Assembly: GCF_002113885.1 (NCBI RefSeq)
Contig: NW_018404672.1
Coordinates: 248,259-312,258 of the forward strand
DNA length: 64,000 nt
DNA from: Mizuhopecten yessoensis
Lineage: Eukaryota
Direction of reading: 5' to 3'
Part shown: piece after piece, positions 16,601 through 63,435 of the stretch
How positions within the stretch are numbered: position 1 is the first letter of the stretch
How the letters are laid out: each line of letters starts with the position of its first letter
Notes under the pieces: model-generated
What the model was told of the DNA's origin: nothing
Database searches by the model: none
What the model saw: the letters and a program-made list of their open reading frames with translations, nothing else
Made by a program: the position numbers and the translations under genes

Positions 16601-19600
16601 ATCATCATCGTCCATCATCATCTGTCATCGCCATTGTCATCATCATTCATTTTTGTTGTCATTGTCATCACCACCTTATGCCAAAACTGATCCTATTGTG
16701 ATACGGTCATGCTGCATAACGTGACGACGTATGATGTCATGATCCTATATTTAAGTGCTGATATTTTCAGAATAAGGTGCGTTGTGAGCTGTTTTTATTA
16801 TATTTAGTAGATACAGACATGTGTATCTTCACTCCTCTGTAAAGTGTGGTAGAATCAGCCACCCATGTTACCTAACTATCCACATCCCCCAGTCTACACG
16901 TTTCAAATCAGGAAAATTTGTTTTCAACTTATGAACAGCCTATGCAATGAACTAGCTTGACCACGCATGTCATGGTAGGGGCGTCATCATATCAATGACC
17001 GTGTAGAGTGCCCAGTAGACCTACCTGTAAAGCAGCAAATATATTGGCCAGAGCTTGACCATATGTATCGTGGCAGTGGACGGCAAGATTATTGACCGGA
17101 ACACTTTTCATCACCTCAGCAAGCATCTTCTTCATTCCCCCAGGCGTGCCAATCCCAATCGTGTCACCGAGGGAAATTTCGTAACAACCCATGTCATACA
17201 TACTCTTTGATACCTAGAACAACGCATCAAAAAACTTCAATCAATCAAAAATACTTTAACCAATCAAAAATACTTCAACCCATCAAAAAAACTTCAATCA
17301 ATGAAAAATACTTCAATAACAAATGTTATTCATATTCTTGGATAATTCACACTGAATCATAATTGTGTGCAACAACACATCCTTGAAATTCAAGGGTTCA
17401 ATTCTCAACATATATATAAATCTTCTCAACACATTTGGAAAATCAAACAATTTACAAAATTGAAGACTCTGTAGGTGTCACCTTGCAAATAATGCAATTA
17501 GATTAGTTTGATACTTTGATGTATGTCAAAAGTATTACTGTATACCGCTGCAGTTAAAATATCAACTTTTTTGCCCAACATACATAATAAGGGTGAATTT
17601 ATCATAACAGCGAATATTAGTAAAGAACATAAAATGCCTAGTAGCTAAATGTAAAGGCAAAATGAACACTGGGCGAATGTGGGTTGTTTTGGCAAAAGTT
17701 TTACTGGGCGAAAATTTCCTGGTATACAGTATGTAACAGTGTAACCGTAAAATTGACAGGACCTGAAGGTGGTGGGTGTCATTCCTTTGTGATCTAAGTA
17801 TCAGCCCAGTGACTGGTCAGGTTTTAATACCTTAAACCAATTTCAAATAGCTTACCGTAGCCTTCAGTTTTGCCGCAACATATTCCAAAGGCACAGAAGC
17901 TATGTGTATCGAAAGCTTTGGATTTCAACCACTGTCATACAGCCAATCAGACATGCCGTAACAACTTATGTCATGCATATAATCTTGGAAACCTAAATCA
18001 GCCAATCAGACATGCAGTAACAACCCATGTCATGTATATAATCTTGGAAACCTAAATCAGCCAATCAGACATGTCGTAACAACCCATGTCATACATATAA
18101 TCTTGGATACCTAAACTAGCCAATCAGACAGGTCGTAACAACCCATGTCATACATATAATTTTGGATAACTAAATCAGCCAATCAGACATGTCGTAACAA
18201 CCCATGTTATACATATAATCTTGGATACCTAAATCAGCCAATCAGACATGTCGAAACAACCCATGTCAAATATATAATTTTGGATAACTAAATCAGCCGA
18301 TCAGACATGTCATAACAACCCATGTCATACATATAATTTTGGAAACCTAAATCAGCCAATCAGACGTGTCATAACAACCCATGTCATATATATAATTTTG
18401 GATAACTAAATCAGCCGATCAGACATGTCATAACAACCCATGTCATACATATAATCTTGGATACCTAAATCAGCCAATCAGACGTGTCATAACAACCCAT
18501 GTCATACATATAATTTTGGATACCTAAATCAGCCATTCAGACGTGTCGTAACAACCCATGTCATACATATAATTTTGGATACCTAAATCAGCCGATCAGA
18601 CATGTCGTAACAACCCATGTCAAACATATAATTTTGGATAACTAAATCAGCCAATCAGACATGTCATAACAACCCATGTCATACATATAATCTTGGATAC
18701 CTAAATCAGCCAATCAGACGTGTCATAACAACCCATGTCATACATATAATTTTGGATACCTAAATCAGCCATTCAGACGTGTCGTAACAACCCATGTCAT
18801 ACATATAATTTTGGATACCTAAATCAGCCGATCAGACATGTCGTAACAACCCATGTCAAACATATAATTTTGGATAACTAAATCAGCCAATCAGACATGT
18901 CATAACAACCCATGTCATACATATAATCTTGGATACCTAAATCAGCCAATCAGACGTGTCATAACAACCCATGTCATACATATAATTTTGGATACCTAAA
19001 TCAGCCATTCAGACGTGTCGTAACAACCCATGTCATACATATAATTTTGGATACCTAAATCAGCCGATCAGACATGTCGTAACAACCCATGTCAAACATA
19101 TAATTTTGGATAACTAAATCAGCCAATCAGACATGTCATAACAACCCATGTCATACATATAATCTTGGATACCTAAATCAGCCAATCAGACGTGTCATAA
19201 CAACCCATGTCATATATATAATCTTGTATTAATAAATCAGCCATTCAGACGTGTCGTAACAACCCATGTCATACATATAATTTTGGATACCTAAATCAGC
19301 CAATCACATGAATTATTCAGTTGTTTGCATGAAACATCCAAAAACTGAACCATTTTTCAACAATTAAAAGAGGTTTAACCCTACAAAACATACAAGTGAT
19401 TTACTTGCCATATTTTTGTGTCGTCATTTCCATATTGTGTATTGGTTATTTCAATGTTGTAGTGTAAATTATGGTAAACAATGGGTAAACACTAGCACAA
19501 GTATGTAGCATTGATTTGTCAACACCCGGATATCTAGATGCATATATATGTTACTGGGGAAATATTTATGAAATAAACCTAAGAGAGAGAGATGCTTCCC

Positions 19601-22600
19601 ATTAATTTACCTGTGTAAGTGTAGTTTACCTGTGTACGTTTAGTTTACCTGTGTAAGTTTAGTTAACCTGTGTTAGTTTAGTTTACCTGTGTAAGTTTAG
19701 TTTACCTGTGTTAGTTTAGTTTACCTGTGTTAGTTTAGTTTACCTGTGTAAGTTTAATTTATCTGGGCTAGCTTGGGTAGTTTATATGTAGTAGTTTGAT
19801 TATAAACCGTGTTGCATTATATCACCCATACATGTACTCCTTTCCTTTTGCTAGTTAAGTTAACCTGTACTAATTTATTTTAACTGTACAACTTTGTACC
19901 TGTACTACATTACTTTACCTCCCCTACTTTGTTTTACCTGAACTACATTACTCTTTACCTCAGCTACTTTTTCAGGGGACACTTCGCCTTCATATGGACA
20001 TCCCATCACACAGGAAACATACCTGCAATCAACATACAAGTTATCAGGTATTGTTTGACCCAACAGGCCTGCCTGGTCAGATGATCCAGCACATCAAAAA
20101 TACACTTTATTCACAGTTCTGGTTGTGACCCATTTTTAGGTTACATTTTTTGTGTAAAAAGGAGTTATTGTAACCGTGGTAAAAACTGTATAAACATAGA
20201 AACATCTTACAAAAACAAGAAGCTGATTTCAGCCTTAAGGACAGGCCCTGATTTCAGCCTCAAGGACAGACCCTGATTTCAGCCTTAAGGACAGACCCTG
20301 ATTTCAGCATTAAGGACAGACCCTGATTTCAGCCTCAAGGACAGACCCTGATTTCAGCCTTAAGGACAGACTCTGATTTCAGCCTTAATGACAAACCCTG
20401 ATTTCAGCCTCAAGGACAGACCCTGATTTCAGCCTCAAGGACAGACCCTGAATTCAGCCTTAAGGACAGACCCTGATTTCAGCATTAAGGACAGACTCTG
20501 ATTTCAGCCTCAAGGACAGTCCCTGATTTCAGCCTCAAGGACAGACCCTGATTTCAGCCTCAAGGACAGACTCTGACTTCAGCCTCAAGGACAGACTCTG
20601 ATTTCAGCTTCAAGGACAGACTCTGATTTCAGCCTCAAGGACAGACCCTGATTTCTTTCTGATCCATTTGACTCGGGATGTTAACTATTAGTTGGCTAAC
20701 GTATAGATGTTTCTTCTGGTGAAAATTTGTTCAGTCGTTCATCTGAAGAAGTTGTTTAAAGAATTTAATTGGTGACAGACATACAACAGACATTAATCTT
20801 CAGACCAGGGGAACTTAAAAACAACGCACAGCCTGCTGTAGAGTGAATATGTTTTGAATATAACAGCTGCTAAGCACAAACTGTATTTGTTGTTGTTGTT
20901 TATTTGTTAATTACCAATGAAAGTTGACTGAATAACTAGTTACTCAGTAGGAAGTTCATAATGATCATTGCCTGATTTAGATAATGATCATTGCCTGATT
21001 TAGATAAAGATCATTGCTTGATCAAGATAAAGATCATTGCCCTATTCAGATAATGATCGGTGCCTGATTCAGTTGCCTGATTTAGATAATGACCATTGCC
21101 TGATTTAGATAATGATCATTCCCTGATTTAGATAATGATCATTGCCTGATTTAGATAATGACCATTGCCTGATTATGATAATGATCATTGCTTGATTTAG
21201 ATAATGATCATTGCTTGATTTAGATAAAGATCATTGCCCGATTAAGATAATGATCATTGCCTGATTCAGTTGCCTGATTTAGATAATGATCATTTCCTGA
21301 TTTAGATAATGATCGTTGCCTGATTTAGATACTGATCGTTGCCTGATTTAGATAATGATCGTTGCCTGATTTAGGTAATGATCGTTGCCTGATTTAGATA
21401 ATGACCATTGCCTGATTATGATAATAATCATTGCTTGATTTAGATAATGATCATTGCTTGATTTAGATAAAGATCATTGCCCGATTAAGATAATGATCAT
21501 TGCCTGGTTCAGTTGCCTGATTTAGATAATGATCATTTCCTGATTTAGATAATGATCGTTGCCTGATTTTGATAATGATCATTGCCTGATTTAGATAATG
21601 ATCTTTGCCTGATTTAGATAATGATCATTCCCTGATTTAGATAATGATCATTGCCTGATTTAGGTAATGACCATTGCCTGATTATGATAATGATCATTGC
21701 TTGATTTAGATATTGATCATTGCTTGATTTAGATAAAGATCATTGCCCGATTAAGATAATGATCATTGCCTGGTTCAGTTGCCTGATTTAGATAATGATC
21801 ATTGCCTTATTTAGATAATGATCATTGCCTGATTTAGATAATGAGCATTGCCTGATTTAGATAATGATCGTTGCCTGATTTTGATAATGATCATTGCCTG
21901 ATTTAGATAATGATCATTCCGTGATTTAGATAATGATCATTGCCTGATTTAGGTAATGATCATTCCCTGATTTAGATAATGATCATTGCCTTATTTAGAT
22001 AATGATCATTGCCTGATTTAGACAAAGATCATTGCTTGATCAAGATAAAGATCATTGCCCTATTCAGATAATGATCGGTGCCTGATTCAGTTGCCTGAAT
22101 TAGATAATGACCATTGCCTGATTTAGATAATGATCGTTGCCTGATTTTGATAATGATCATTGCCTGATTTAGATAATGACCATTGCCTGATTATGATAAT
22201 GATCATTGCTTGATTTAGATATTGATCATTGCTTGATTTAGATAAAGATCATTGCCCGATTAAGATAATGATCATTGCCTGGTTCAGTTGCCTGATTTAG
22301 ATAATGATCATTTCCTGATTTAGATAATGATCGTTGCCTGATTTAGATGATGATCATTGCCTGATTTAGATAATGATCGATGCCTGAATTAGATAATGAT
22401 CGTTGCCTGATTTAGATACTGATCGTTGCCTGATTTAGATAATGATCGATGCCTGAATTAGATAATGATCGTTGCCTGATTTAGATGATGATCATTGCCT
22501 GATTTAGATAATGATCTTTGCCTGATTTAGATAATGATCATTCCCTGATTTAGATAATGATCATTGCCTTATTTAGATAATGATCATTGCCTGATTTAGA

Positions 22601-25600
22601 CAAAGATCATTGCTTGATCAAGATAAAGATCATTGCCCTATTCAGATAATGATCGGTGCCTGATTCAGTTGCCTGAATTAGATAATGACCATTGCCTGAT
22701 TTAGATAATGATCGTTGCCTGATTTTGATAATGATCATTGCCTGATTTAGATAATGAGCGTTGCCTGATTTAGATAATGATCATTGCATGATTTAGATAA
22801 TGATCGTTGCCTGATTTAGGTAATGATCGTTGCCTGATTTAGATAATGACCATTGCCTGATTATGATAATAATCATTGCTTGATTTAGATAATGATCATT
22901 GCCTGATTTAGGTAATGATCATTCCCTGATTTAGATAATGATCATTGCCTTATTTAGATAATGATCGTTGCCTGATTTAGATACTGATCGTTGCCTGATT
23001 TAGATAATGATCGATGCCTGAATTAGATAATGATCGTTGCCTGATTTAGATAATGATCGTTGCCTGATTTAGATAATGATCATTGACTGATTAAGATAAT
23101 GATCGTTGTCTGATTTATGATAGTTGCTCTCAGGACTCCCATTTTTCTGCACAGTGATTACTATGCTGTATCATGGTCACTGCAAATTGCATGGTACTGG
23201 CTCTAGATCTCTGTAACCCATTTTCCTCGCAGCAGAAATATGCAATTGTAAGAGAAAACCCAGTAATGTACCAGTTATACTCACCCCCTTACAGGTATCC
23301 TACTTTCCTTAGCTGCCTTCATTACTTCTTCAAATCGCTTCAAGCTATCTGCTATACTGCAATTTATATTTTTCCTGTTGAAAAACAAACAAGAACTTCT
23401 ACAAAAGGACCTTTCATGAAGTTGCATACATTATCATCAACTGGGTTAGGACTTCTGATCTCATATTATATTATCAAATCAAAATTTATGTAAATCAAAA
23501 TATCTAAAAGGACACAAAAAACATCAAATAAATTGCTGAACACATCCTTTCTGCAAGTTCAGTTTTTAGAGCAAACATGAACTGAAGTGACTAATAAATC
23601 CTAAGGTTCAGGTGTCTGAAATTATTCCTTTATATATAATGCTCAGGATTCCCTTATTCAGAGGCTATCAAGAAAACTTGGCAGGAGGCACCACCCCTGA
23701 GGTCCGAGTGTCTGAAACAGATGATGGCACGGAAGCCTGATCACCTTCACTGGAGTTCTATTGTCTATCTCAGTGTAATAAACAACTTATTGTCATTTTT
23801 GAAAGGAAACATAAATCTTTGTTACCCTCGATCAGTCATGTTTCACGAGAGTTTGCCCTCGCAAAACCAGGGCTACATTCGCGTATCCCGGTTGAAACGG
23901 TACTTGTGGCGCAGAAGTAGTCTACGATAAACGATCGCACTTGGACCGTTCTGTGAGCAAAGCTAAAAATGCACAGTTTTGAAGAATAAAAAACAATGTA
24001 TCAAGAATATTATGCCCTTCTTTTACGCGTCCACTGAATTAAATTAACGTATCTTAAAAACTACATGTGACTTGACATTATTTTAGAAAGAAAAAACGCA
24101 AACTGGCAATAGTCAGCATTTTAGTTTCGGTCAGGTACGTCTGGACCCCTCAATCTACACGTGCCAAATTTTCCTGAGGTCAGCCTCGGTCCAGATCTGT
24201 ACCTGTCATTTTCTTTACAGGTTCAACCGGATACAGGAATGTACCCTTGATTGATCTGGAGGTAACAAAGAATCATGTTTCCCTTACCATAATGGCAATC
24301 AATGTATTATGTTCCTCATAGTAGTAGTAATCACATGGTAAACTGACCTTGTGCTAACTTCAGAGATTATCTGTGTTGAGAGATTATCTGTGTTGAGAGA
24401 TTATCTGTGTTGAGAGATTATCTGTGTTGAGAGATCCCTTTTAGGATTTCTTGAGGGTGGTCATCCCTTACTATACCCTGTAATATTGCCAACTACCATT
24501 CTGTATCATTTTGGCAGTAAAATGAGGGAGGCTATATACTGAGTCGACCATTATGAAAACTACACAGCTAACATGTTATATTAGATCATCCGAACATGAT
24601 GTGTAATTTTAGGTCATCCTGTAACATAGGCTTAATCTACCCTGTACATTTTATATTTTATATTAATAATTGAAAATAAATTATCATTTAGTCTACCACA
24701 GGAAGCACCTTGGTTTATGAACAAACAGATCAGCCTCTCCATTGGTGAAATTCTATATGATTTTTTACAATGTGTATTACACAGATTTTCTGTAACAGCT
24801 TCTCAGACAGAAATCAAAATCAAATAGTGATTATCCAGGACAGGTCTAATTTCTACTTCTTCTAATAACATCATCTGGTCTGAACGACAACAACAACAAG
24901 AGGGGAAAATCTCATTGACAAGATTTGTGTTAAAACGTCTGGAAAAAAGGTTAACTCTGTGGCTGATAATCAAAGAACACCACAAGTAATCCAGAAATGT
25001 TTGCTTTCTGATTTCAGTACTGTTTCTACATACCTGCTGGCTCTCTGATTTCAGTACTGATTCTACATACCGGCTGGCTCTCTGATTTCAGTACTGTTTA
25101 TACATACCTGCTGGCTCTCTGATTTCAGTACTGATTCTACATACCTGCTGGCTCTCTGATTTCAGTACTGTTTCTACATACCTGCTGGCTCTCTGATTTC
25201 AGTACTGTTTCTTCATAACTACTGGCTCTCTGATTTCAGTACTGTTTCTACATACCTGCTGGCTCTCTGATTTCAGTACTGATTCTACATACCTGCTGGC
25301 TCTCTGACTTCAGAACTGTTTCTACATACCTGCTGAAGCTTTCTGAAGCTGCTCCAAATATTGCTACTTCTGTCGCTTTTGCACTTACCTGAGAAAAAAA
25401 GGAAAATATTTCAAACTTGTGCAACATATATACCAGGTAGTTTCTGTTATAGGTGTAAAATACTTGACAACAAAACACAAACTTTATTCACAAAATCATC
25501 ATTACAGTAAAGTCTTAATCTAAATCATAAATGGAAACTTTCTTGATTTTAGAACAATTATGAAACAACAAGGTTTTTTTTCAACTTTTATTAATCACTC

Positions 25601-33862: not shown

Positions 33863-34550
33863 TTTTTAGGTCACCTGAGCTTTAGCTCAAGTGACCTATT
33901 GCTATCCGTTTTCGTCCGTCGTCCGTCGTCCGTTAACATTTTACATTTCAAACTTAAAGTCAAGTTCTGCTGGGCCGATTGAACTGAAAGTTGATAGGAA
34001 TGATCGCCTCATGGTCCTGACAAAGTGTTGTTATTTTTCGGGTCGATCAGAAATCCAATATGGCCGCCACGGCCGCCATTTTGAAAACCTATTTCAAACT
34101 TAAAGTCAAGTTCTGCTGGACCGATTGAACTGAAAGTTGGTAGGAATGATCGCCTCATGGTCCTGACAAAGTGTTGTTATTTTTCGGGTCGATCAGAAAT
34201 CCAATATGGCCGCCACGGCCGCCATTTTGAAAACCTATTTCAAACTTAAAGTCAAGTTCTGCTGGACCGATTGAACTGAAAGTTGGTAGGAATGATCGCC
34301 TCATGGTCCTGACAAAGTGTTGTTATTTTTCGGGTCAATCAGAAATACAATTTGGCTGCCATGGCCGCTATTTTGCTACTAAGTTCTAATAGGCCGATCT
34401 CACTTAAAATTGGTCTAGGAATGATCAGCTCATGGTCCTGACAAAGTTAAGTTAACATTATACTATTTTTTACTCAAATTGGTACATATTTCAACAACAA
34501 AAATAAATACTATAGACTCAGGTGACCGTTAAGGCCCATGGGCCTCTTGT
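33863..34550 (+). mobile_element. HINE-like element, copy 2, with ~3.5 internal 146-bp repeats
   Basis: Same termini and modules as 14864-15860. Unit starts at 33961, 34107 and 34253. Confidence 0.88.
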
Positions 34551-38400: not shown

Positions 38401-41400
38401 GACTTACTACAATGAACTGTTTACAGAGATTACGAAGCAGTCCATTCGCAAAGCAGTCTGGGATTACCTGGAGCATAACAACCTGGTGAATTTCCCACGT
38501 CCAGTTTACAACAGGATTCCTAACTTCAAGGTATGTCACCTCACTAAAAAGTCGACTTGTTCAGTGTGTGCATGGGTCCATGTGTCCAAAGTAAACCGCT
38601 ATCTTGTGAACCCCCTCAACATCAGGTTCTTTCTAATTACTTGATTGGATTTTAGAGGTCATTGGTTAAGGTTGAATGGTAAAAAGTTATACTCCACGAC
38701 TTTGCGGGAGCTGGGCATTGGGGTAATATCTGTGTGAGTGCCCGCTGAAAAAATAATGATTTTGAAATAGTTGGGAGAATTTATCATAACTTCTGTATGT
38801 TGTCAAAATGCTTCTTATTGATCAGGGCCCATGTTCATGAACTATTCTCATGCTCAAGCATGGATTTTGTGCTCAAACCAACTTATTTGTAACTCACTTG
38901 AAATCATTTCATGCAATCAAACGTCAAATCTGAACATCGAGAACAGTATTTGGCTATAAGTCTCTTCATTTTTTTTTTACGAATCATTTACAAAATAACA
39001 TTTTATTATTAATCCATATACTAAATATAAAAATTAGGTTTGAGCACAAAATTCATGCTTGAGCATAAGAACGGTTTCATGAAAACAGGGCCAGATGTTT
39101 TCATCTTATACTCAGGGTTATAACTTGACAATGGAAGATTATTTTTGAGTATCCCTGCCATCCCGATAACTAATCTTAAATTTGCACAGGAATTGATAAT
39201 TCATATCTGAAAAGAAAACCTTACCTTGCAGCACTTTTTATAAAAAGTCAATAATAGAAATGAAGTAAAAAATGTAAAAATGCAATTGAGCAAGACTAGC
39301 ATTGGAACCACATACCTTGCAATTGTTATACTGTATCACCCTAACTGCTACCTGGTCAACATCAGCTACCTAACCAGTCATATACCTGGTACATCCAAAA
39401 TCAAATTAAGGAGAGGTTACCTTATGAACAAAAAGCTACAGTAGAATTCTCTATTGTTTTGCCTGTGATTGGACATGTATCTTTATAATGCTCTCTTTCA
39501 TACAAAAATGTAATCGTTAATTTCTATCATGACAAAGTGGTGTTACTCATTCGCACAAAATCATGCAGAAGAATAAAGAACGACATTCTCTACCTCATTG
39601 ATCAGTGTTGATTTGTCTGTCTTTTAACAGGGAGCTGCTAATGCCGCTGAGAAGGTGCCAACCATGGACGAATTCAAATCAGCGAATGTCGTGAAAGTGA
39701 ACCCCGATAAACCTCAGGAAAATGTGCGCTTCCTGACTCTGGAGGTAGGTTCAGTTTAAACCTTACTGTTCATTAATCTGGGGGTAGGTTTGGTTTAGAC
39801 CTTTACACCATTCCTGAATCTGGAGGTAGGTTTGGCTTAAACTGTCTCTTGACTTTTGAGGTAGGTGAGGTTTTGTCAAAACTGTTCCTGAATCAGGAGG
39901 TAGGTCCTGTTTAGGTTTGACTGTTTTCTGAATCAGGAGGTAGGTCCTGTTTAGGTTTGACTGTTTCCTGAATCAAGAGGTAGGTCCTGTTTAGGTTTGA
40001 CTGTTTTCTGAATCAGGAGGTAGGTCCTGTTTAGGTTTGATTGTTTTCTGAATCAGGAGGTAGGTAGGCCTGTTTAGGTTTGACTGTTTTCTGAATCAGG
40101 AGGTAGGTAGGTCCTGTTTAGGTTTGACTGTTTTCTGAATCAGGAGGTAGGTAGGTCCTGTTTAGGTTTGACTGTTTTCTGAATCAGGAGGTAGGTCGGT
40201 CCTGTTTAGGTTTGACTGTTTTCTGAATCAGGAGGTAGGTAGGTCCTGTTTAGGTTTGACTGTTTTCTGAATCAGGAGGTAGGTCGGTCCTGTTTAGGTT
40301 TGACTGTTTTCTGAATCAGGAGGTAGGTAGGTCCTGTTTAGGTTTGACTGTTTTCTGAATCAGGAGGTAGGTCCTGTTTAGGTTTGACTGTTTTCTGAAT
40401 CAGGAGGTAGGTCCTGTTTAGGTTTGACTGTTTTCTGAATCAGGAGGTAGGTAGGTCCTGTTTAGGTTTGACTGTTTTCTGAATCAGGAGGTAGGTCCTG
40501 TTTAGGTTTGACTGTTTTCTGAATCAGGAGGTAGGTAGGCCTGTTTAGGTTAGACTGTTTTCTGAATCAGGAGGTAGGTAGGTCCTGTTTAGGTTTGACT
40601 GTTTTCTGAATCAGGAGGTAGGTAGGTCCTGTTTAGGTTTGACTGTTTTCTGAATCAGGAGGTAGGTAGGTCCTGTTTAGGTTTGACTGTTTTCTGAATC
40701 AGGAGGTAGGTAGGTCCTGTTTAGGTTTGACTGTTTTCTGAATCAGGAGGTAGGTAGGTCCTGTTTAGGTTTGACTGTTTTCTGAATCAGGAGGTAGGTA
40801 GGTCCTGTTTAGGTTTGACTGTTTTCTGAATCAGGAGGTAGGTCCTGTTTAGGTTTGACTGTTTTCTGGAGCAGGAATGTGTGCAGTTTAGCAACACTGT
40901 TCTTTACTTTAGTCCAGTTGATGAAAAAATAGTTTTGTGAAAAATGTAAAAGTTTAAAAATGATAAATGTTTATGTGATAGTGATAGAAATGTACATAAG
41001 TATTCTTCTGTCAACTATGTTGATTATATATATGCAGTTAGATTCAAATATTGTGTTCCCTATTTTTATAGACTTTTTTCCCCAAAATTTACACATTTTT
41101 TTCCCCTTAAAGATACGCAATATTATTTAATACTATACTTAATTACAAAACGAAGTTAAGAAATTCCTATATTCTTTACAAGAAATGAGGAGAAGAAAAG
41201 GAGGAGATGAGTTTTAGTTTGAATCATTTTCAAAATCATTGCAGGACACTGTCAGTAAATATTCGACAGGGAATCCTCTGGATCTGAACCCCAGATGGTC
41301 AAATTAGGCAATTGGGATTGTATGTAGGAGTGGCCTGGAAATGATGACTCTAAGATAAAGAAATATATAAGGGGGTACACTTGAAAAATACCTTACCGTA

Positions 41401-48478: not shown

Positions 48479-48520
48479 GGTCCTGATGAAGACTCGCTGA
48501 AGAGTCGAAACTAGTCGGTC
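48479..48520 (+). ncRNA. Minimal type I hammerhead ribozyme motif (Penelope-type)
   Basis: GGTC-CTGATGA-A-GACTC(gctgaa)GAGTC-GAAAC-TA-GTC-GGTC: intact core, 5-bp stem II, palindromic ACTAGT stem III, GUC cleavage triplet and a 4-bp stem I with two G.U pairs. Confidence 0.7.
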
Positions 48521-52500: not shown

Positions 52501-54667
52501 ACAAAACACTGAAAGTACACTTTCTTTATAAAAGATGCAAGCTTCTCTGAGACTTAGCTCTATTTATATAAAGAGGATGTAACATAACATACAAACACCT
52601 ACCGAAACATTGTGAATACAGCTCTCTCCGTACTGGACAAATACCAGTCTCCCTTGCCTGCCTCTGTTGCAACCGTCTGTCAAGTTCTTCCTGTAGATTG
52701 ACCACATCAAGACGTGTGGCTGGAGTACTGGACACCTGCTGGACCCATAACTGACCACCCTCTGTCCATTCTCTATTGAATGTACAAGTGAATATACAGT
52801 AAAACATAATGGCTTCCGTCAGTTATTAGAAATAGCTGTATCTAAAACACTAATCTGACCATATTCATGCATACATGAGCCTACATTGCATGATATCTGA
52901 AAGAAGGCCTTGTGTCAAATGCAAATTGATAGCAGGAAATATTATGAACAGACATACTTAATCTCAGATTTATCAACATAGAATTTCAAGCATAAATCTA
53001 TCTTTTACATATCAATTCTTCATTAGAAATGTAAAGTATTAATTTTATATGACCAAAATGTATTATCAAATCAATCAGACTAATATCCATCAACATTTTA
53101 TTGATGTCTACAATCATTGGTACAGCAAAAACATTCTTTTTCCCTATGCAAATATTTAGACATTCTAAGCAGATAACTATTTTTTTAGCTAATTAAGTGT
53201 AATTTAAGTATGTTCTAATATCAAAGCATTTTATCTTTGTTTTTAACCCTTTCACCCCTAGGTTACTTTAGTAGACTCTACCATACATTGATCTGGATGA
53301 ATATATTATGGTCTACAGTAGTGAAGGGGTTAAATATAGATGTAATGCCTTTTGAAGTTACCTTGGTGGTAGGATGGAGTTGAGGATTTCGTCTGTTTGT
53401 TGTGCTGCTTTAGCGTCGACCGAGGTTGGCTTCTGTTTGCCTGGTGGGTTTGGGACAGGACCTGTTGCTGTGGACGGACCTGGGCTCACCTTCAACGCTC
53501 TAGCCTGTCAATGATTAAACTTATTTATTAAACTTCTAAAAGCCTCACGTATCCTGCTGCGTTAAAGGAGAGTGATAATCGAACTGACCCTAGCCTCAGT
53601 ATCGTCAAAGTAATGTGTATGCATATTATAATGCAAAAACAATAATGGAGGACAGCAAATGGGTAATTATACAAATACTTGATGTGCTGCCCCTTTGTAG
53701 CCTTTAATATGGAATTAGATAATTGATAATTGGGTTATGAATGACAACCATTGAACCAAGCAGGATCATTCATATTTAAGGTTGCTAAACATCTGGTTAG
53801 TCATAGTTTATGTAATTAGACATCTCCTGTAGCCTACTTGGGCAGTAAAATGTGGTACTATCGCTGCTTACCACCTATAAGAACTGATGTTTTTGCTACA
53901 TAGAAAGATCTTTTAAATACAAAGGATATTTTGTGTGTTGTACGTATACGTCCATACAAGATCTTTTAATAACTGTCAGATAGAAGTTCCAACCATAAAA
54001 TAATTTAAATTGCAAATTTATAGCTATACATGTGTGTCAATAAGTCTATGACAACATAACAGCTCATTCAGGAATGACTTAAATCACTTTCAAAGAATCC
54101 TTATTTGACAATAATGTGGGTAGAATAGCGACTGAATTACAAGTCGTATTACACCTAAATTATGAAGTGACAGAATAGCATAGCCTAATATATTTGGTTC
54201 ACATACATAATTGGTAGCCACCATGGGAATCTCGAAATTCATTTAACAAAATTTGGTTACACAAGTAAAATTTGAGGTAGAAATTTTCTTCCTATTTAAC
54301 CACATCAAATTCCATTCCTATTTGGTGTAACATAGCAACATTGATTAGTTGATTGCATTATAAGGATTTAAAAAAAATACCCATTTGGATCGATTTGAAA
54401 AGTGTATATTTATTATGAACAAAAACTTAGGTGAAACTTCTTAGTGAAAAACACAATTTCTCAAATATATCATTTAGAAACAAGTCCTGGATCCAAAACT
54501 TTCTGCATGTAAACACATCCATAAAACGTGTTTACAAACTGAATTGAACAATTAAAACATTTTACAAAACACTCGTCAACCCATACCCGTGGTGTCTTCT
54601 TGTCTGTGTTCCTACTGACGAGGACTGGGTTGTCATACTTGACTAAAGATGCGTTTGGTGGAATCAT
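49509..54667 (-). CDS. DNALI1: Axonemal dynein light intermediate chain (p28/p33); exons 54667-54587, 53504-53362, 52772-52603, 52275-52097, 51022-50858, 49544-49509 (257 aa)
   Basis: MIPPNASLVKYDNPVLVS, EILNSILPPREW, VSSTPATRLDVVNLQEELD, RQARETGICPVRRELYSQCFDELIRQVTINCAERGLLLLRVRDE, YQTLYESSVAFGMRKALQAE and C-terminal QLEGIIAPKK*. Junctions are GT-AG and in phase. Confidence 0.97.
51192..51540. mobile_element. Foldback segment plus adjacent TIR element
   Basis: GCAAGACCACACACTTGTGTTT / AAACACAAGTGTATGGTCTTGC (51192-51298), with an inner hairpin TTATTGCACGGACG / CGTCCGCGCAATAA. Then TTTCTCACATACCT / AGGTATGTGATAAA (51299-51540). Confidence 0.6.
53243..53333. mobile_element. ~91-bp MITE, subfamily A
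   Basis: TTAACCCTTTCACCCCTAG...GTGAAGGGGTTAA. Confidence 0.8.
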
Positions 54668-54804
54668 TTTGGCTAAGTTTGCTGCAAAATATTCCTGTCC
54701 CGGTCCTCTTCTTTGCTTGATCTGCTGCTATAGCAACACTGTAGTGCGCATGCTCCAATTTACTTCTCGCTTAACTTGTTTCCGACGAGATTTCAACGAA
54801 CAAG
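54668..54804. promoter_or_regulatory. Compact bidirectional promoter/5' UTR region between DNALI1 and EMC2
   Basis: Divergent ATGs are 137 bp apart. RFX X-box-like GCTGCTATAGCAAC at 54724-54737, NRF1-like TGCGCATGC at ~54745-54753, and YY1-like CAAGATGGCG over the EMC2 ATG. Confidence 0.75.
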
Positions 54805-57800
54805 ATGGCGCGACGCATTGGATGGGAGGGTAAGGTTAAAACAGGATGCTTTTTGTGCATACTTCACTCCAATATACATGTTTTGACAAGATTTTATGCA
54901 AAGACGTTCTTTATATAATCGGCATAACCACCAAGTATCCATCAGTAGGGTATTTGAGGAAATGATCGACCGTAGAGTACACGGCCATTAGTGACAGGTT
55001 CGACCACAAAACACTCGCTTTAAAACAGATGTGCATGTGTACAGTAGGGTTAAGACACCCTTGTGTTGATACTGACATTACCAGAAGTTATCTGTTATCG
55101 GCTAGGATATATGTGATCGGTTCCGCGTTTAAACCTGAATGGTATCTCTCGTACAGAGTACTGTTGACAAGATTGCCAAATTGCCATTGACAGGTTTAGT
55201 ACAGTATTAAGGAGACCCAAATCGCATCAGTACTCAAACCGGAGCACTTTTTGCAAATATACTTATCAGGGTGGGGAAAACCACCAACTTGCGTATAATA
55301 CGAAAACTCTCATATTATACGCCAATTGGAGTATGGATTTGTTACTAAAAATAACCAAAATCGCTTTAACAGTAACTTTTGCAAGAATCGCATTAATTTA
55401 CGACAAGGTAAATAATATTTTGCTAAAAGATGTTTACTGAAAGCGTTGGCTACTTAGAAACTTGATGTAACTTTACCAGAAGTATTGTATCTATTTTTGG
55501 TACTTTCCCACATGCAAATAAAGTTTATTTTTGCATTTGTATTATGTTTCATGACTGAATAAATGCGACTTGGACAAACCATTTGAAAAAGTTAAGATTA
55601 AAGTGATTTTGGCTATTTTTAGTAACAAATCCATACCCCTATTGGCGTATAACAGGCGAGTTTGCGTATTATATGCAAGTTAGTGGTTTTCTTCGACCTG
55701 CTTATAAATAAATAAACATGTCAACAAATCAGTTATGACAATGATGTAGTCTTAGAATAGATAGCCATGCACCATTTTTTGTCTACAGATGATTAGTTTT
55801 TAAGTTCAAATAGCACAAGAAATCGTAATTCAAACTCAAATGTCAGTGTTTTGATCACGTTTTAAAAAAAAGGGCACATGCAACGACTATGCATTCTGTT
55901 TTGGACTATAGGAATAAATTCACACTTTCGAAAATACTTTTTGTCATATAAATTCTAAATTTATAAAATATGAATGTTAATATGCTGACAAAAAAGGTGA
56001 AGCATAAGAAACTGCAAAACTCAGCCTTGATCCGATTTGGGTCCTGACATTCCTAAAATCTGGAGGTGCTGATTGGTGAGTTCAGGGTGTTCTATGAATA
56101 TCTCAAGTGAGCCCTGGGTGCTAATTTCGTTTGTAAGAACACCCATCGATATTCTATTTTTGATACAACCATAAATGAATATAATTCCTCCTCAGATATT
56201 TCAATGATTAATAAAATGATGGTTTGGTGATTCGATTTGGGTACTGTCACCTTACCCCTCATATCATGGGAAATAATCCTTTATAGTTAGAGTAAAATTT
56301 ACTGTGACTCCCATGGTGTCATACAAATTGAAATAAGAACATGCGAAGATCTCTTAAACATCAACATCAGTGACAAAAAGTGTAATATTCTTCGAAAGCA
56401 GTTCAATAGATAATACAATGGGCTGCAGTTATCGATAATAATGTCTATGTCTTAGTTAAATTTGCATCGCATGCTGGTATGTGTACCACCTGTTTTGCTT
56501 GCCGATATTCCGTAAACTGCAAGCGGAAACATTGTTCATTGATGGTAAACAATTTGTTGCAAACAAAATCTCAAAAAATCCTGGTCACAAAAGGATCCCC
56601 CGCTACCACTGACTGCCAGGAATTGTAACTTATCTGATTATTCCAGCATGACTATAGCTTCAAGAAATCATTTCTGAATAGAAAACCATGATGATATCTA
56701 AAAGGTCTTGAAAAAACTAAAGTGAAATAAAGAAAAAACACTCAACATTCTGAATGTTAATGCCATCAACATGGTCCCTTTCGATTATCTGGTTCAACTG
56801 GTTTAAATATGACATTTTCAGGTAAAAATCCTGGCGAACTTGCAAATGCTTATGCATGCTTTGTCAAGGCTCGCCTAAAAGCAGCCTCAAGTTACTAGGT
56901 CCCACCATAAATGAACAACTCTGGTTCATCCGTTTAGGATCGCGACAAATGAATGGGGCCTGCAATTCAAACCCCCGACTTTAAGATTGATATGCTATAC
57001 CGTTCTAACTGATTTAGCTTTCTGGGTAATGGAAGTGCTACAGTTACACCCAAAATTGAATTAAGTGGATATTACCGTTTATACAAAAAGGCACATTGTA
57101 GTTGGACAGGGATTTTTAACACTATATTAATATAGTATTTTCATTACCGGTTAGCAGATACACTGTATTTCTGATTCTGATACATACTCTCAAGTCGGAG
57201 ATAAAAAAAAATCCTGTGAACTTGGACATTTTTTAGCGAAGATTGTTATACATGGAAGTTGTCAAGTTCTTGTTAAACAGACTCTCTTTGCTTGTTTGTG
57301 TCAGCAAAAGGGTGTCTGCATCATCCTGAACTGTTTAAATGAAGTTCAATTTCTATTATTTTATTTTGTAGAAGCTAGAAATATATTGAGAAGGATCCGA
57401 GAAGAACAAGCCAGAGATGGTCAAACGGTGGTCCGCGTATGGGAGGAGGTCCTAATGAAGAACAGAAACAAACTAGGAGACGAATGTGAGTTGTGTACGA
57501 AGGGGAAGAGCAATCATGACGTTTTACCTACATGCTAATTAGTAATGATGTGCCCATTTTACAATCAGTTTGATATTTACCTCCCTTTCATAACAGACAA
57601 GCCATATATGATTGTTGTCTCCATTGGCTTTATATATTTATCTAACTTATTTCCTTAAGCTTTAATATCAGGCTTGAAATTGTCATATACATAATATATG
57701 CAGGCCTAAAGCAGTACCCTTCAGACGACAAGACATGCTAATCAGAGAGTAGAAATTTTGATTTTGAATTGTTCCAAGTTAAGAATAAGTGCCCATGAGT

Positions 57801-60800
57801 TGTTTTAAGGCCTGTTGGCTTTCAGTGTGCATTTTTGGGAGACAAACTATGGTAAAATATATGAGCTTCTTGTTTTAGTATTAAAAAGAAAAAATCAGTG
57901 ATAAAATTCATGCAATATCTGAAGTAAGATTTTTTTTCTGATTTTGTTTTGCAGTATGGGTCGTATACGAACAAGTGTGTATTGCTGCTCTGGATTGTCA
58001 ACGTTTTGATTTAGTTGATGTAAGTTATATATCAGTTTCATTTTGTGAGACATGTGTTTTCATGTTAACATGGCAAGTCATTCAACATATTTTTTTTCAA
58101 CCAGAAACACAAAGACATCCATTGTTCATTTCACAAATTCAAATTTTTGTGAACAAAGTTTTTTAAGCAAAAGTAATTAGTATTTAGGATAAAATTTGGT
58201 GTTTAACAGAATGTGAAAGTAGAGCAGGTTGACTTGTGAAATGGACTTTCTATCTGGTCAAATATACCATTGTACACTCATTTTCACTGTGTTCTATACT
58301 AAGTTTTAGAAAACATGTCTCTTTATGTACATGGGTGTCTGGAAGATAAAATATTTATTTCAAGAGTAAAGGAAGAATTGGTGGAAGTACCTGGTAGGCC
58401 AAATTGATAAAATATTTTTCTTGTAAAATACTGGGTAACTGACATTTTGCTTTGTTTAAAATCATTCACATGACTAATATCAGTTATTCAATTTATAATC
58501 ATCCCAAAAAGAAAAAATGAAAACACTCATTAAGTTTGTAGCTCGTAACATCGTTTTTAAAGTGTCACTGTATGATTTTTCAGGCCTGTATAACAGTGCT
58601 GAAGGACAACTTTCCAAAGAGTATACGAGTGGACAGATTACGAGGAATGTTTTTTGAAGCTCAGGAAAGGTAAAATATTTTTGAGACCAGGTGTTAAAAT
58701 TAATATATATACATTTTCCATAAGGTCTGAAATGTTTAAAAATTTGTCACTGTGATATCAAAAAGTTCTTTGTTAAAAATACATCCCAGTCAAAAACTTT
58801 ACTGCCTAGCAAGGTAAAATATTTTGAGATTTGAGACCAGGTGTTAAAATTAATATATATACATTTTCCATAAGGTCTGAAGTGTTTAAGAATTTGTCAC
58901 TGTGATATTAATAAGTTCTTTGTTAAAAATAAATGCCAGTCGAAAGCTTTACTGCCCAGCAAACAGCATTGTAGACAAAAAGGTTTATTATTATTATTTT
59001 TCATCCATAGAAATATTACTCTTTTCAGGTTCAGCAAAGCAGATGAAGTATACAAAAGTATAATTGACAGAGATGAAACAAATATGGTATGTTGAGTATT
59101 AAGATTGGGACTGTCATATTAAAAATATATTGCTGTTTTGAGAGAGGATGTGGAGAGGGGGGTGATAAATTATACAAAGGAAATTTCAGCTATATTTTCA
59201 CAAAATCAATGCCATCTTCACCAATCTTCATAATACATTGAAGTTTTTGGAAAGAGGAACACACTTTTCATTTTCAGACCATCCCTCAAATGTCAAGAAA
59301 AATGTTTTCCAATCAGATTAGGTGATGGTTTCCATTTACCAACTTCACTTTACACAAAAATAGAGTCTCTGCTAGTATTGGCATCTTCTATTTACTGTAA
59401 AAAGTGAATATTTTCATGCGATGGAAATATTTTCCTTTTTGTTATCGCAACTAAATCATTCAGTAAAGTGTGGAAAAAATGTTCAACACGGAGACAATTT
59501 TCCACTTTTGCAACACTGTCAACAAGTTATCGTAAACAGGAATTAAATTTTTGGTGTATCCTGCATCAATGCATAAATGTGTTTAAAAAAATATCTGATC
59601 TGTATTAAATCAAAATTTAAATCAGAATTAACAATGCATGTATATTTTTGTATTACATGTATTTGCCAAACTTTCTCATTAAACTGAATATTTTATTTTT
59701 TTCAGTTCGCCAAAAAGAGACAAGTCTCGGTTCTGAAAGCACAGAATAAAATTCCAGAGGCCATTGATAAACTGAATGGTTATCTCCGAGAGTAAGTAGA
59801 CTTTAAGGAGTTAAATTCCATGCCCCTTTGCTAAACTGAATGGCTATTTCTATGAGTAAGTTGTCTTATATCATGAATTTCCAGACTCCATTGGTAAACT
59901 GAATGGTGATTTCCATGAGTAAGTTGTTTTTATATCATGAAATTCCAGACCCAGTTGATAAACTGAAGGGTTGTTCTCAAGTGGAAAAATAATTCCTAGA
60001 GTAAATTTCCAGACATCATCAAAAAACTGGATGGTTATTCTCAAGAGCAGGTAGATTTCAATGAGTTAATTTAGGCAGATTTCATAGAGTTAATTTCCAG
60101 CTGCTATTGATAACGATAAACTAAATGTCTATTCACAACAGTAGTGATGATAGTATAAATTCCAGAGTACTTGGTTAACTGGATGACGTTTCCAGAGACT
60201 CAGAGTTTATAGTTGAATAAACTAAAATAAAAAAAAATCCCATCACATATCTTGTTTGGATCACGCAAAAATTATTATTGAAACAAAAAATATCAGAGCT
60301 TTCCCTTCAAATGTAAGTCGAAGGGCAAGACATTGCAGCACATGGTTTTTTTTTAAATTTGCCTTTTCACAAAAAAAAATTTTGGTCTGGACAAATCTTT
60401 TTCAAACTGTTGATCAGATTTTAACAAATCATTGTACATACTGCCAATAGCTTTATTACATTCATCACTGTAAACTGTATAGACTACATGTGGGGTTTTT
60501 TAACCCTTTACCACTGTAGACCATAATTGACTCAACCAGATCATTGCATGGTAGAGTTAGTTTATTAAAGTTTCATAGGGGTGAAAGGGTTTAGGGCTGT
60601 TCGAGAAGTTAGCAATTTGGGAGGGGTGGGAGGTACTTTTTCAGAAACCCCAAACACCCATCAAATTTTAACAGTGACTGGATGTCAGAAATGGTACATT
60701 GTAGGTAGATCTGGTTTTAAACCCACTACCCTTAATATGTTTATATAGATGCCTCCCACCTCCCCCATATGATTAATTATGGAATAGCCCTAATCCAAAA

Positions 60801-63435
60801 GAGCCACAGGTTATACAGAGCTGGTACAGAGGTACAGGCATATGATGTTCATGCCAGTAGCAGTTATAGTACATATGTATGTTAAAGAGACAGTTGACTG
60901 GAAAGCCCATTGGACCTCTTGTTTTTGAAACTTTATGTTTCTGTTATGCAGACAGCTTTTATTGCTGAGGTATCAGTGGATGTTTTCTGTATCTTAACAT
61001 TTCCTTGTCATGTTAACTCATTCACCCCTGAAGACACATTTGAACTCTTCCATTTCAAAGGTTGAAGTTGTTTATTATGAAATTTCAGGGGTGAATGAGT
61101 TAAATTACCGACATTGATATTGTATAAATTTGTTGTTTACAGATTTATGACCGATTTTGAGGGGTGGACAGAGCTGTGTGATTTATATCTGTCTCAACAG
61201 GACTATCAGAAGGCAGCGTTTTGTATAGAGGAACTGATAATGTCCAACCCCCACAATCACCTTTACCACCAAAAATATGCAGAGGTGAGTATACGTACCA
61301 CACAATTTTATATACCACCAAAAATATGCAGAGGTGGGTACCACACAATTATATTTACCACTAGAAATATGCAGATGTGGGTACCACACAATTATATATA
61401 CCACCAGAAATATGCAGATGTGGTTACCACTCAATTATATTTACCACCAGAAATATGCAGATATGGGTACCACACAATTATATTTACCACCAGAAATATG
61501 CAGATATTGGTACCACTCAATTATATTTACCACCAAAAATATGCAGAGGTGGGTACCACTCAATTATCTTTATCACCAGAAGTACAAAAAGGAGGGTATA
61601 AAACAATTATTACCAGAACTAGCAGATGTTGCGACATAGACATTGTATGTCACACCACACAATTATCTTTACAACAGAAATACGGAGATGAGGATATCAC
61701 ACAATTATCACCAGAAATATGCAGGAATCCAGTGCTCAAATCTGATCTTCAGAATCTTTGATGTTTTTAATGTGGATATTTTCACTGGATATTTTATTTT
61801 ATGCTGTGACTTTTATCACTGGACTGTCTTTGCTGCCTACGTTAATCTTCCTGTGTAGAACTTAATGTGTTCAAGTAAAATTTAAATAAATTTAAACATC
61901 TCATTGTTATTTTCAGATCTGCTACACCCAGGGCAACTTTGAACAAGCCCGGTCTTATTTTGCTCAGGCACTGAAACTCAACCCTAACAATATCCGTGCT
62001 CTATATGGATGTTTCCTGGTAAGAAGGATAACAACTTGTTTTCTGGTGTATTGATTTCTGAATCATGTATGCTGTGTAAATACATAATATTTTTCTCAAC
62101 TGTGTCCAGGAGTCATATTATGGCATGCTTCGTGTTAAGACATCATGGAAGTACGGACCAGGAACATGGGCACTACTTGTTCAAACAGTTTTCAAACCAC
62201 AGCCAATATTTTAGTATATTATGTTTGATTAGGTTTTAGTTTAGATCAAATCATCATCATCAAGATATAGGTTTTCTTGAATCTTTCCCTATAATGTAAT
62301 TTTTCATCCGATTTTCATTTAAAAATGTCCGTATATCAGCTTTAGTTCTGTGTTGTATTACAGTCATCGTGCAGTCTAGCCTCCACAAGTAAGAGCAAGG
62401 AGAAGCAAGCTAATGTAAAGTATGCGGCCTGGGCAGCTCAGCAACTCAAAGAGAAATATGTGGTAAGTACATAATGCCCCTCCAGTTAGTTACATGTTCT
62501 AACTCAGAGAGGAGTTTGTAGTTAGTTAACCGTAATGGTTCAGCACTATAAGGGTAAAGATTTACCATCTTCCTTAGGTAATAAAATAATTCAAGTTTTA
62601 AAATCTTAAGATGTGATATCCATTTTGGTTTTTGGCCGAGTTCACTTTTGAGAAAAATGAGAACATTTACGACATTCACTTATAAAACTGCATATACATG
62701 TGTGTTTCTTGTGGTCCACCTTCTAAAACATTTCCTTTCAAAGAAAATGTGAAATAAAAATAGGAATCGGTGTATTAGATATTAATGATTACAGAAGATG
62801 TTATGTCTGCTTTGATCTGGTCAGACTATATCTCGTCTGACATCTTGTGTTGTCGACCCTTCGTGGACTCCATCGCTGCATATATACCGGAACTTTTCGT
62901 GAATGATAACAAGGTCACATTTGCGTATCCCGTTAGAAATGGTTCAGATGGCGCAGAAATATACCTCGATAAATGAACGCCCTCAGATCCGAGTCTGTGA
63001 CAAATAAATAGCAATATATCAAGGTAAATAGGTTCTTTTTTCATGCATACATTAAACTTTATAACATTTCCTGAAAGTGCAGAAATAATGCATATTAGCG
63101 CCAGGCAGCATTTTATGTAGTCAGACACATCTGTACTCCTCGAGATGCACATACATGAACCAAGGGATTAGCCTCAGTTTAGATCTGAGCCTGTCACTTT
63201 CTGTTTAGGTTTAACTGGTTGAAACAGTTAGAATGCATGCATTTAAAATGTAAACAAAGGGAGATAATGAGTCACGAGGTTAATTTAACTTTCATATTTA
63301 AAAAAAATGTATTTCAGAATTTTTGATTTGTTGTTGTTACAGACAGTGCAGTCCGAAGATGGCACCAAACAAACCAGGATATTGGAAACAATTGACAGAC
63401 TTCTAGAATCTACCACAGAAAAAGCTAGTAATTGA
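54805..63435 (+). CDS. EMC2: ER membrane protein complex subunit 2 (TPR protein, TTC35); exons 54805-54829, 57372-57485, 57955-58019, 58584-58669, 59029-59086, 59706-59791, 61143-61284, 61917-62018, 62364-62462, 63343-63435 (289 aa)
   Basis: [86 protein letters not shown] and [21 protein letters not shown]. Junctions are GT-AG and in phase. The last exon is the least conserved. Confidence 0.93.
55207..56254. mobile_element. TIR element (TTAA/AGG-type, possibly Kolobok-like) carrying a nested MITE
   Basis: Right end TGATTCGATTTGGGTACTGTCACCTTA is the inverse of the left end of the 32397 copy. Confidence 0.6.
55267..55700. mobile_element. Nested MITE with ~115-bp TIRs and 5-bp TSD (CTTAT)
   Basis: CAGG..GAAAACCAC.AACTTGC.TATAATACG / inverse ending CCTG, with CTTAT on both sides. 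Absent from the 32397 copy. Confidence 0.85.
58667..58960. repeat. ~144-bp tandem duplication starting at the EMC2 exon-4 donor
   Basis: AAG|GTAAAATATTTT..GAGACCAGGTGTTAAAATT at 58667 and again at 58811. Confidence 0.9.
59749..60200. repeat. Degenerate ~63-bp repeat of the EMC2 exon-6 end plus donor
   Basis: AATTCCAGA..CATTG.TAAACTGAATGG..AT.TC..GA|GTAAGT, with GT at 59792, 59856 and 59919, then decaying copies. Confidence 0.8.
60500..60593. mobile_element. ~91-bp MITE, subfamily A (opposite orientation)
   Basis: TTAACCCTTTACCACTGTAGACC...TAGGGGTGAAAGGGTT. Confidence 0.8.
60592..60792. mobile_element. ~200-bp MITE abutting the right end of the 60500 MITE
   Basis: TIRs TAGGGCTGTTC / GAATAGCCCTA and subterminal IRs GGGAGGGGTGGGAGG / CCTCCCACCTCCCCC. 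Confidence 0.65.
61013..61103. mobile_element. ~91-bp TTAA-flanked MITE, subfamily B
   Basis: TTAACTCATTCACCCCTGAA...TTCAGGGGTGAATGAGTTAA. Confidence 0.85.
61262..61725. repeat. 43-bp repeat (~10 units) of the EMC2 exon-7 end plus donor
   Basis: TACCACCA(A/G)AAATATGCAGA(G/T)|GTGGGTACCACACAATTATATT versus the authentic TACCACCAAAAATATGCAGAG|GTGAGT. Confidence 0.92.

What the first reader, a model, noticed from the sequence alone, without database searches (positions are those of the whole stretch)
17179..61725. Recurrent splice-junction-seeded tandem repeats: intronic arrays built from copies of the gene's own exon boundary
Seen: at seven junctions in three genes, an intronic repeat unit includes the splice site, usually with adjacent exon and intron sequence. 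They are HMGCL exon-8 acceptor (59 bp x~23), HMGCL exon-7 donor (19 bp, decayed), HMGCL exon-5 donor (37 bp x~9), MTHFSD coding exon-3 donor (40/44 bp x~27) and EMC2 exon-4, -6 and -7 donors (144, ~63 and 43 bp). That is 7 of 28 coding introns. The units are unrelated to each other, so each arose independently, and they range from fresh to heavily decayed. Inference: either a mutational process targets splice junctions (for example transcription/splicing-coupled R-loops or breaks repaired by tandem duplication), or such arrays are retained as copy-number-tunable decoy or alternative splice sites. The null is that this genome makes minisatellites everywhere and junction-spanning ones survive because the original site still works. 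I cannot say whether this has been described already.
Basis: partly seen in the sequence, partly recalled or inferred. Interest (0 to 1): 0.9.

Follow-up and report, generated by a model that had tools for sequence, protein, structure and literature searches.

The report
Splice-junction minisatellites ("mirages") in scallop genes
Seven intronic repeats in three Yesso scallop genes really are tandem copies of the genes' own exon-intron boundaries, a known kind of repeat (amphioxus "mirages", human F7) that here also occurs in related scallops, varies in copy number between animals and shows no sign of being used in splicing.

Summary
The window is Mizuhopecten yessoensis (HMGCL-MTHFSD-DNALI1-EMC2). 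All seven junction probes match their own intron better than all 200 controls. Corrections: this is 7 of 56 junctions in 6 (not 7) of 28 introns; the HMGCL exon-8 array lies ~725 bp from its exon; EMC2 exon-4 is a two-copy duplication holding 3 exon bases.

The class is known: amphioxus 'mirages' and the human F7, 6-16, CBS, LMNB2 and PDGF minisatellites. Independent DNA runs carry parts of the EMC2 arrays, and one lacks exactly one 63-bp unit. In two RNA runs the true EMC2 exon-4 donor is used and no decoy use shows at ~15-25x depth. Most decoys would meet a stop or shift frame.

Orthologous introns of Ylistrum (6), Pecten (1), Argopecten (1) and Mytilus (1) carry such arrays; three donors are shared with Ylistrum. 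Enrichment over uniform seeding is 5x here (window pre-selected) and 2.5-3.5x in unselected relatives, where 2-3x longer survival at junctions erases it. Best reading: neutral local duplication, anchored and kept at a boundary that cannot be deleted. A splicing-coupled mutational bias is not excluded. The scan noted the same class at many other places in this genome.

The parts
17940..19306 (-). 59-bp array, about 23 copies (236-bp higher-order period), of the HMGCL exon-8 acceptor: about 16-20 nt intron plus about 40 nt exon; copies lack a polypyrimidine tract; detached about 725 bp from the exon
17025..17213 (-). HMGCL exon 8 (true acceptor AG at 17215-17214)
17226..17344 (-). 19-bp array (x4.9) just upstream of the true acceptor, preceded by a decayed exon-8 copy (about 17316-17344); probable remnant of the once contiguous array (inference)
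19602..19970 (-). 19-bp array of the HMGCL exon-7 donor: decayed proximal part (19863-19970) and homogenised distal part (19602-19765)
19959..20022 (-). HMGCL exon 7
25003..25346 (-). 37-bp array x9 of the HMGCL exon-5 donor (17 nt exon plus 20 nt intron); 6 copies score as high as the true donor
25330..25388 (-). HMGCL exon 5
39631..39744 (+). MTHFSD coding exon 3
39730..40876 (+). 39-44-bp array, about 27 copies, of the MTHFSD exon-3 donor (15 nt exon); first four units diverged (57-64%), core 89-100% alike; 25 exact donor 7-mers
58584..58669 (+). EMC2 exon 4; true donor used by 14 and 24 RNA reads in two runs
58667..58962 (+). two-copy 144/150-bp duplication starting 3 nt inside EMC2 exon 4; no RNA depth over it
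59706..59791 (+). EMC2 exon 6
59748..60060 (+). 63/64-bp array, about 4-5 decayed copies, of the EMC2 exon-6 donor (44 nt exon); one unit (59845-59907) absent in DNA run X11
61143..61284 (+). EMC2 exon 7
61249..61725 (+). 49/43-bp array of the EMC2 exon-7 donor (about 36 nt exon): about 7 clear copies to 61581 plus decayed tail; copies keep ancestral bases at two exon sites
62443..62525 (+). possible eighth, heavily decayed duplicate of the EMC2 exon-9 donor (58-bp offset); weak; Pecten has a fresh 55-bp array at this donor

Best explanation
These are mirage-type minisatellites, by-products of a genome that makes many local tandem duplications. (1, inferred) A short segment of 19-150 bp is duplicated in place by slippage or break repair, with breakpoints on either side of a junction. 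(2, shown for EMC2 exon 4, inferred elsewhere) The duplicate is tolerated because the true site stays outermost: the most upstream donor or the most downstream acceptor, giving the shortest exon. Splicing picks that site, as shown experimentally for human F7; rare use of a copy mostly meets a stop and should be removed by NMD. (3, shown) The unit expands, contracts and homogenises in mid-array while the edge units decay, and copy number differs between animals. (4, inferred) The seed includes coding sequence and a splice site that cannot be deleted, so junction arrays outlive or are re-seeded longer than free intronic arrays. That produces much or all of the 2.5-5x excess; a mild mutational preference for exon edges may add to it. 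No function is needed.
For: Anatomy matches the mirage description point by point. True donor used and no depth over the EMC2 exon-4 duplicate; the exon-6 bin is fully explained by the exon tail. One-unit deletion in an independent animal. Decoys are not purged and not useful: first stop at +1, +1, +12 and +79 in four of six donor arrays, and only two in-frame stop-free options in all. Arrays come and go at different junctions in different scallops with unrelated units. Exon share of the units varies from 3 to about 60 nt with no fixed breakpoint. Three donors are shared with Ylistrum although those introns are otherwise unalignable, and EMC2 d7 copies keep ancestral bases, which points to long persistence. 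The excess in relatives loses significance at 2-3x persistence. Upstream-most donor rule: PMC1557585.
Against: The excess in this window stays at P 0.02 even with 3x persistence (P 0.08 if the intron target is also cut by 30%), though the window was chosen for the feature. The persistence factor was assumed, not measured. RNA evidence covers only EMC2 at about 15-25x depth, and the joints table was truncated by a high-copy element. Run X24 shows about 5 reads in EMC2 intron 7 (none in X23). DNALI1 has no such array in any of six species, which uniform seeding does not predict but small numbers allow.
Confidence: 0.65

Rival explanations
1. A mutational process targets exon-intron boundaries of germline-transcribed genes (polymerase pausing or R-loops at splice sites, nucleosome or methylation steps, or meiotic break hot spots), and repair yields short tandem duplications centred on the junction. 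The arrays are still neutral.
For: Observed 7 vs 1.29 expected here (P 1e-4) and 8 vs 2.32 in three other scallops (P 0.001) under uniform seeding. Position-level test: 6 of 28 donors vs 3.7% background, P 5e-4. The same donors are hit in Mizuhopecten and Ylistrum (3 of 4, P 0.012, post hoc) with different unit lengths and with copies carrying lineage-specific exon bases.
Against: Without the three shared sites the relatives give 5 vs 2.0 (P 0.046), and P 0.30 at 2x persistence. Pecten (1 vs 0.66) and Argopecten (1 vs 0.46) alone show no significant excess; Crassostrea has none. No fixed breakpoint and no exon-exon joined units were seen. CpG o/e does not separate genes with and without arrays. 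Shared sites fit one inherited event on either rooting of the scallop tree.
Confidence: 0.25
2. The arrays are kept by selection as tunable decoy or alternative splice sites that set expression (through NMD) or give isoforms according to copy number.
For: Many copies keep donor or acceptor scores equal to the true site. Human 6-16 and CBS use one or two proximal pseudo-sites (PMC1557585). Two in-frame stop-free options exist: HMGCL d7 +21 and EMC2 d7 +264. A few intron-7 reads in run X24. Copy number is polymorphic.
Against: No RNA depth over the EMC2 exon-4 duplicate or beyond the exon-6 donor in two runs. The X24 intron-7 reads extend past the array, as retention or pre-mRNA would. For the MTHFSD and EMC2 arrays, position and unit are absent in Pecten and Argopecten. 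The HMGCL acceptor copies have lost the pyrimidine tract and score below the 10th percentile of true acceptors.
Confidence: 0.07
3. Assembly artefact or chance similarity.
For: The longest arrays hold exact internal repeats (561 and 247 bp) that an assembler could inflate.
Against: Decay gradients from the exon into the array; independent DNA samples carry array edges with their own variants; the same structures occur in four other species' assemblies; scores beat all nulls.
Confidence: 0.03

Closest known systems
Amphioxus 'mirage' minisatellites (Adh3, Canestro et al. 2002, cited through PMC3087553 and PMC3902484; globins BflGb6 and BflGb9; troponin C; PGBD5)
   Same: Tandem units of 10-160 bp spanning donor or acceptor boundaries; many but not all copies keep GT/AG; normal splicing; length polymorphism; homogenised core with boundary units excluded.
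   Different: Host is a bivalve, not a cephalochordate. I found no paper reporting mirages in scallops in 8 searches of the held library. Here a local enrichment estimate and a cross-species comparison are added. Somatic instability was not tested. The original 2002 paper could not be read.
Human exon-intron-spanning VNTRs: F7 IVS7 (37 bp), 6-16 intron 2, CBS IVS13, LMNB2 (100 bp), PDGF intron 4 (81 bp) (PMC1557585)
   Same: First unit spans the donor; identical pseudo-donors follow; the upstream-most site is used; alleles differ in copy number.
   Different: Those are scattered single genes and all donors. Here the density is 7 of 56 junctions, with acceptor cases too. 6-16 and CBS use one or two proximal pseudo-sites; such use was not seen here.
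Intron gain from internal tandem repeats (Rogers model; PMC2812944; model in PMC3087553)
   Same: The same raw material: duplicated splice signals next to exon sequence.
   Different: No new intron or exon arose in these genes; exon boundaries map at the same places in all six bivalves compared.

Membership tests
mirage minisatellite | Tandem repeat whose unit spans an exon-intron boundary of the host gene | tested here: met
   all seven; EMC2 exon-4 has only two copies and 3 exon bases; the HMGCL exon-8 array is now detached from its exon
mirage minisatellite | Many, not all, copies keep the GT or AG splice signal | tested here: met
   25 MTHFSD and 6 HMGCL d5 copies score as high as the true donor; 22 HMGCL acceptor copies keep AG but are weak
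mirage minisatellite | Normal splicing at the authentic site, no aberrant mRNA | tested here: inconclusive
mirage minisatellite | Copy-number polymorphism between alleles | tested here: met
   DNA run X11 lacks 59845-59907 (one 63-bp unit), X5 has it; one array, one contig
mirage minisatellite | Concerted evolution of the core with boundary units excluded | tested here: met
   MTHFSD edge units 57-68% vs core 89-100%; same pattern at EMC2 d7, HMGCL d7 and a8
mirage minisatellite | Unit length within the reported 10-160 bp | tested here: met
   19-150 bp vs PMC3087553
mirage minisatellite | Somatic instability (mosaic adults) | not testable with these tools
   needs small-pool PCR or deep long reads from single animals
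intron gain by tandem duplication | A new intron or exon formed from repeat units | tested here: not met
   exon boundaries conserved across six bivalves
transposon-derived repeat | Unit dispersed elsewhere, independent of the host exon | tested here: not met
   none of the seven arrays falls in the window's dispersed-repeat intervals; each unit matches only its own junction; tested within the window only

The most novel reading that the evidence does not exclude
Scallop genomes have a splicing- or transcription-coupled mutational hot spot at exon-intron boundaries that repeatedly seeds arrays at the same junctions in separate lineages, and exon ends go on exchanging sequence with their intronic copies. 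One hint: in Ylistrum EMC2 the derived last base of exon 7 is shared with 94 of 99 copies while the copy next to the exon keeps the ancestral base. Scallops would then be the model for how splicing shapes mutation and for intron gain by the Rogers route.
Probability: 0.2. Interest if true: 0.75.

Novelty: new member of a known kind. Interest (0 to 1): 0.3.

Why it matters
The structure is known, but how mirages arise is still open (PMC3087553 calls the mechanism unclear). Scallops carry them densely (7 of 56 junctions here, 6 of 42 in Ylistrum), have several assemblies and many resequenced animals, and so make the question of targeted mutation versus survival testable genome-wide. They also offer many natural tests of splice-site choice among identical copies, including acceptors. 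In practice these arrays can mislead gene annotation, read mapping and assembly polishing.

Tried and rejected
(1) Original mirage paper: not held under DOI, PMC or PubMed id; cited only through two papers that describe it.
(2) Gene-body methylation as the selector: CpG o/e does not separate DNALI1 (no arrays) from EMC2, HMGCL or MTHFSD.
(3) Faster exon change in copied stretches: none (8/232 vs 253/7012, P 1.0).
(4) mRNA-templated origin: no unit joining two exons was seen in the seven arrays.
(5) The other arrays in these introns (12, 17, 23, 25, 25, 50, 92 bp and others) do not match any junction; the 146-bp arrays are cores of a dispersed element.
(6) The ungapped position scan misses the HMGCL acceptor array, which needs gaps; it was counted. 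It also flagged Mytilus MTHFSD a5 (score 38), which TRF and inspection did not support, so I did not count it.
(7) My three-branch tree does not settle the root; the unrooted split Mizuhopecten+Ylistrum vs Pecten+Argopecten agrees with PMC11354973.
(8) HMGCL exons 4-10 of relatives could not be fetched, so the three HMGCL arrays have no cross-species comparison.
Spliced models were built only inside scripts and never sent to a search tool; searches used single exons by reference, and one search used a stop-free frame by reference with only the exon-7 residues scored. The N stretch 16202-16492 was not filled or looked up. L009 is another copy of this genome, returned when the matching protein was looked up; it does not cover the gap and was not analysed.
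Full report
Identity and gene models. The window holds HMGCL (-, 30476-13635, 10 exons), MTHFSD (+, 35487-44173, 6 coding exons), DNALI1 (-, 54667-49509, 6 exons) and EMC2 (+, 54805-63436, 10 exons). All introns are GT..AG and all frames are open. EMC2 is identical over 280 of 280 residues to Mizuhopecten yessoensis OWF53423.1, so the organism is the Yesso scallop. The gene order is conserved in Ylistrum, Pecten and Mytilus.

Observation. TRF shows arrays at all seven named places. A 40-nt probe across each junction was aligned to its own intron and to 200 equal-length pieces of other introns. The seven named junctions score 30-53 against null maxima of 19-27, each alignment spanning the junction. 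The EMC2 exon-8 and exon-9 donors are marginal (22), and exon 9 looks like an old duplicate. Three corrections: the seven junctions lie in six introns; the 59-bp HMGCL array is about 725 bp upstream of the true acceptor, linked to it by a decayed copy and a 19-bp array; and EMC2 exon 4 is a two-copy duplication with 3 exon bases. Unit walks show homogenised cores and diverged edges, for example MTHFSD 57-64% for the first four units and 89-100% in the core.

Reads. One call laid two RNA runs and two DNA runs on 57300-62600. DNA: two samples from studies other than the best holder carry the array edges with their own variants, and run X11 lacks 59845-59907, exactly one 63-bp unit, while X5 spans it. 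The arrays are therefore real and polymorphic. RNA: the true exon-4 donor is joined to exon 5 by 14 and 24 reads, and depth over the duplicate is zero in both runs. Depth in the bin after exon 6 equals what the 14-nt exon tail predicts (about 2.1 and 1.2 expected, 2.07 and 1.11 seen; my arithmetic from the depth table). Intron 7 is empty in X23 beyond 61370 but has about 5 reads in X24 that run past the array, which fits retention or pre-mRNA rather than decoy use.

What use of a copy would do. With a donor matrix from 121 true sites, 25 MTHFSD copies, 6 HMGCL d5 copies and the EMC2 d4 copy score as high as the true donor, so decoys are not purged. Read-through meets a stop at +1 (EMC2 d4, d6), +12 (MTHFSD) and +79 (HMGCL d5, where the earlier decoys shift frame). 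Only HMGCL d7 +21 and EMC2 d7 +264 would be in frame and stop-free. The HMGCL acceptor copies score 0.6-4.4 against 6.0 for the true site.

Relatives. Exons were mapped in four scallops, Mytilus and Crassostrea. Junction-spanning arrays occur in Ylistrum (MTHFSD d3, 33 bp, 4.7 kb; EMC2 a3, d5, d6, d7, a9), Pecten (EMC2 d9), Argopecten (EMC2 a7) and Mytilus (EMC2 a2). There are none in Crassostrea and none in DNALI1 of any species. Three donors are shared with Ylistrum (P 0.012, post hoc) and absent in Pecten and Argopecten. My tree and the mitogenome tree of PMC11354973 give the same unrooted split, so one gain or one loss per site suffices. At EMC2 d7 both units begin at nearly the same exon position and the Mizuhopecten copies keep ancestral bases at two sites where the exon has since changed, which suggests an old array. 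Yet copies also carry lineage-specific exon bases, which implies re-seeding or conversion. Copied exon stretches do not evolve faster.

Enrichment. With seeds placed uniformly on collapsed introns and any overlap counted, this window gives 7 observed vs 1.29 expected (P 1e-4) and the three other scallops 8 vs 2.32 (P 0.001). The window was selected for the feature, so the relatives are the fairer test. Dropping the three shared sites leaves 5 vs 2.03 (P 0.046). Giving junction arrays twice the lifespan gives P 0.046 for all relatives and 0.30 without the shared sites; three times gives 0.20 and 0.60. A real 2.5-3.5x excess over naive seeding therefore exists, but a modest survival advantage can account for it. 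Such an advantage is plausible because the seed cannot be deleted and one copy is under purifying selection (inference; not measured).

Mechanism. Best reading (0.65): local tandem duplication with breakpoints on either side of a junction (inferred); tolerated because the true site stays outermost and is chosen (shown for EMC2 exon 4; shown experimentally for human F7 in PMC1557585); turnover by unequal exchange or slippage (shown by gradients and polymorphism); long persistence at the anchor (inferred). Rivals: junction-targeted mutation (0.25), selected tunable decoys (0.07), artefact (0.03).

Comparison with known systems. [quoted passage not shown] PMC1557585 lists human F7, 6-16, CBS, LMNB2 and PDGF. 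Five defining features were tested and met, normal splicing was met only at EMC2, and somatic instability was not testable. I found no paper on mirages in bivalves in the held library, which lacks most subscription journals.

Earlier scan notes report the same class on many other pieces of this genome and disagree on enrichment. I reached the mirage reading before seeing them. Their disagreement prompted the sensitivity test; they are not counted as support.

Verdict. Real, a new member of a known kind, probably neutral. What remains of interest is the high density in scallops and the testable question of origin. Interest 0.3.

Noticed in passing
L007 28220-28600 (Ylistrum EMC2 exon 8): The end of exon 8 is a patchwork of exon-7-end, exon-8 and neighbouring-array pieces, lying between two large junction arrays; the annotated protein is 5 aa short. 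Probably a consensus or polishing artefact caused by the arrays.
   Followed up: partly
L007 22770-28070 (Ylistrum EMC2 intron 7): The derived last base of exon 7 (A) is shared by 94 of 99 copies while the first copy keeps the ancestral G and is a stronger donor than the true one; hints at exon-array sequence exchange.
   Followed up: partly
window 60499-61104: MITE-like element with about 92-bp inverted ends in EMC2 intron 6; the ends recur at many places in the window and at very high depth in DNA and RNA runs.
   Followed up: no
window 14864-15860 and 33863-34550: Two copies, in opposite orientation, of a dispersed element with 146-bp tandem cores (5 and 3 copies) and a short 7-bp repeat, like bivalve non-autonomous core-repeat elements (from memory).
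   Followed up: no
window 6245-9693: 3.4-kb 30-bp array with extreme strand skew; minus-strand frames are open for 540-750 codons and read Thr/Pro/Ile- or His/Tyr/Thr-rich; may be a mucin-like exon or non-coding.
   Followed up: no
window 61285-61758: EMC2 intron 7 stays open in the exon frame for 158 codons through the 43-bp array; about 5 intronic reads in RNA run X24, none in X23.
   Followed up: partly
window 49509-54667: DNALI1 has no tandem array in this window and no junction array in any of six bivalves; the ends of its introns 1 and 5 are conserved between scallops. It shares a 138-bp bidirectional promoter gap with EMC2.
   Followed up: partly
window 20223-23122, 35739-36217, 37972-38200, 24362-24435, 1-2120: Other large minisatellites (25, 23, 25, 92, 17, 38 bp); the intronic ones do not match any junction, showing the general minisatellite load.
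   Followed up: partly
L008, L010, L011, L012: Many non-spanning arrays in Pecten and Argopecten start 8-90 bp from a junction (e.g. Pecten EMC2 intron 7, 8 bp from the donor); proximity was not tested against a null.
   Followed up: no
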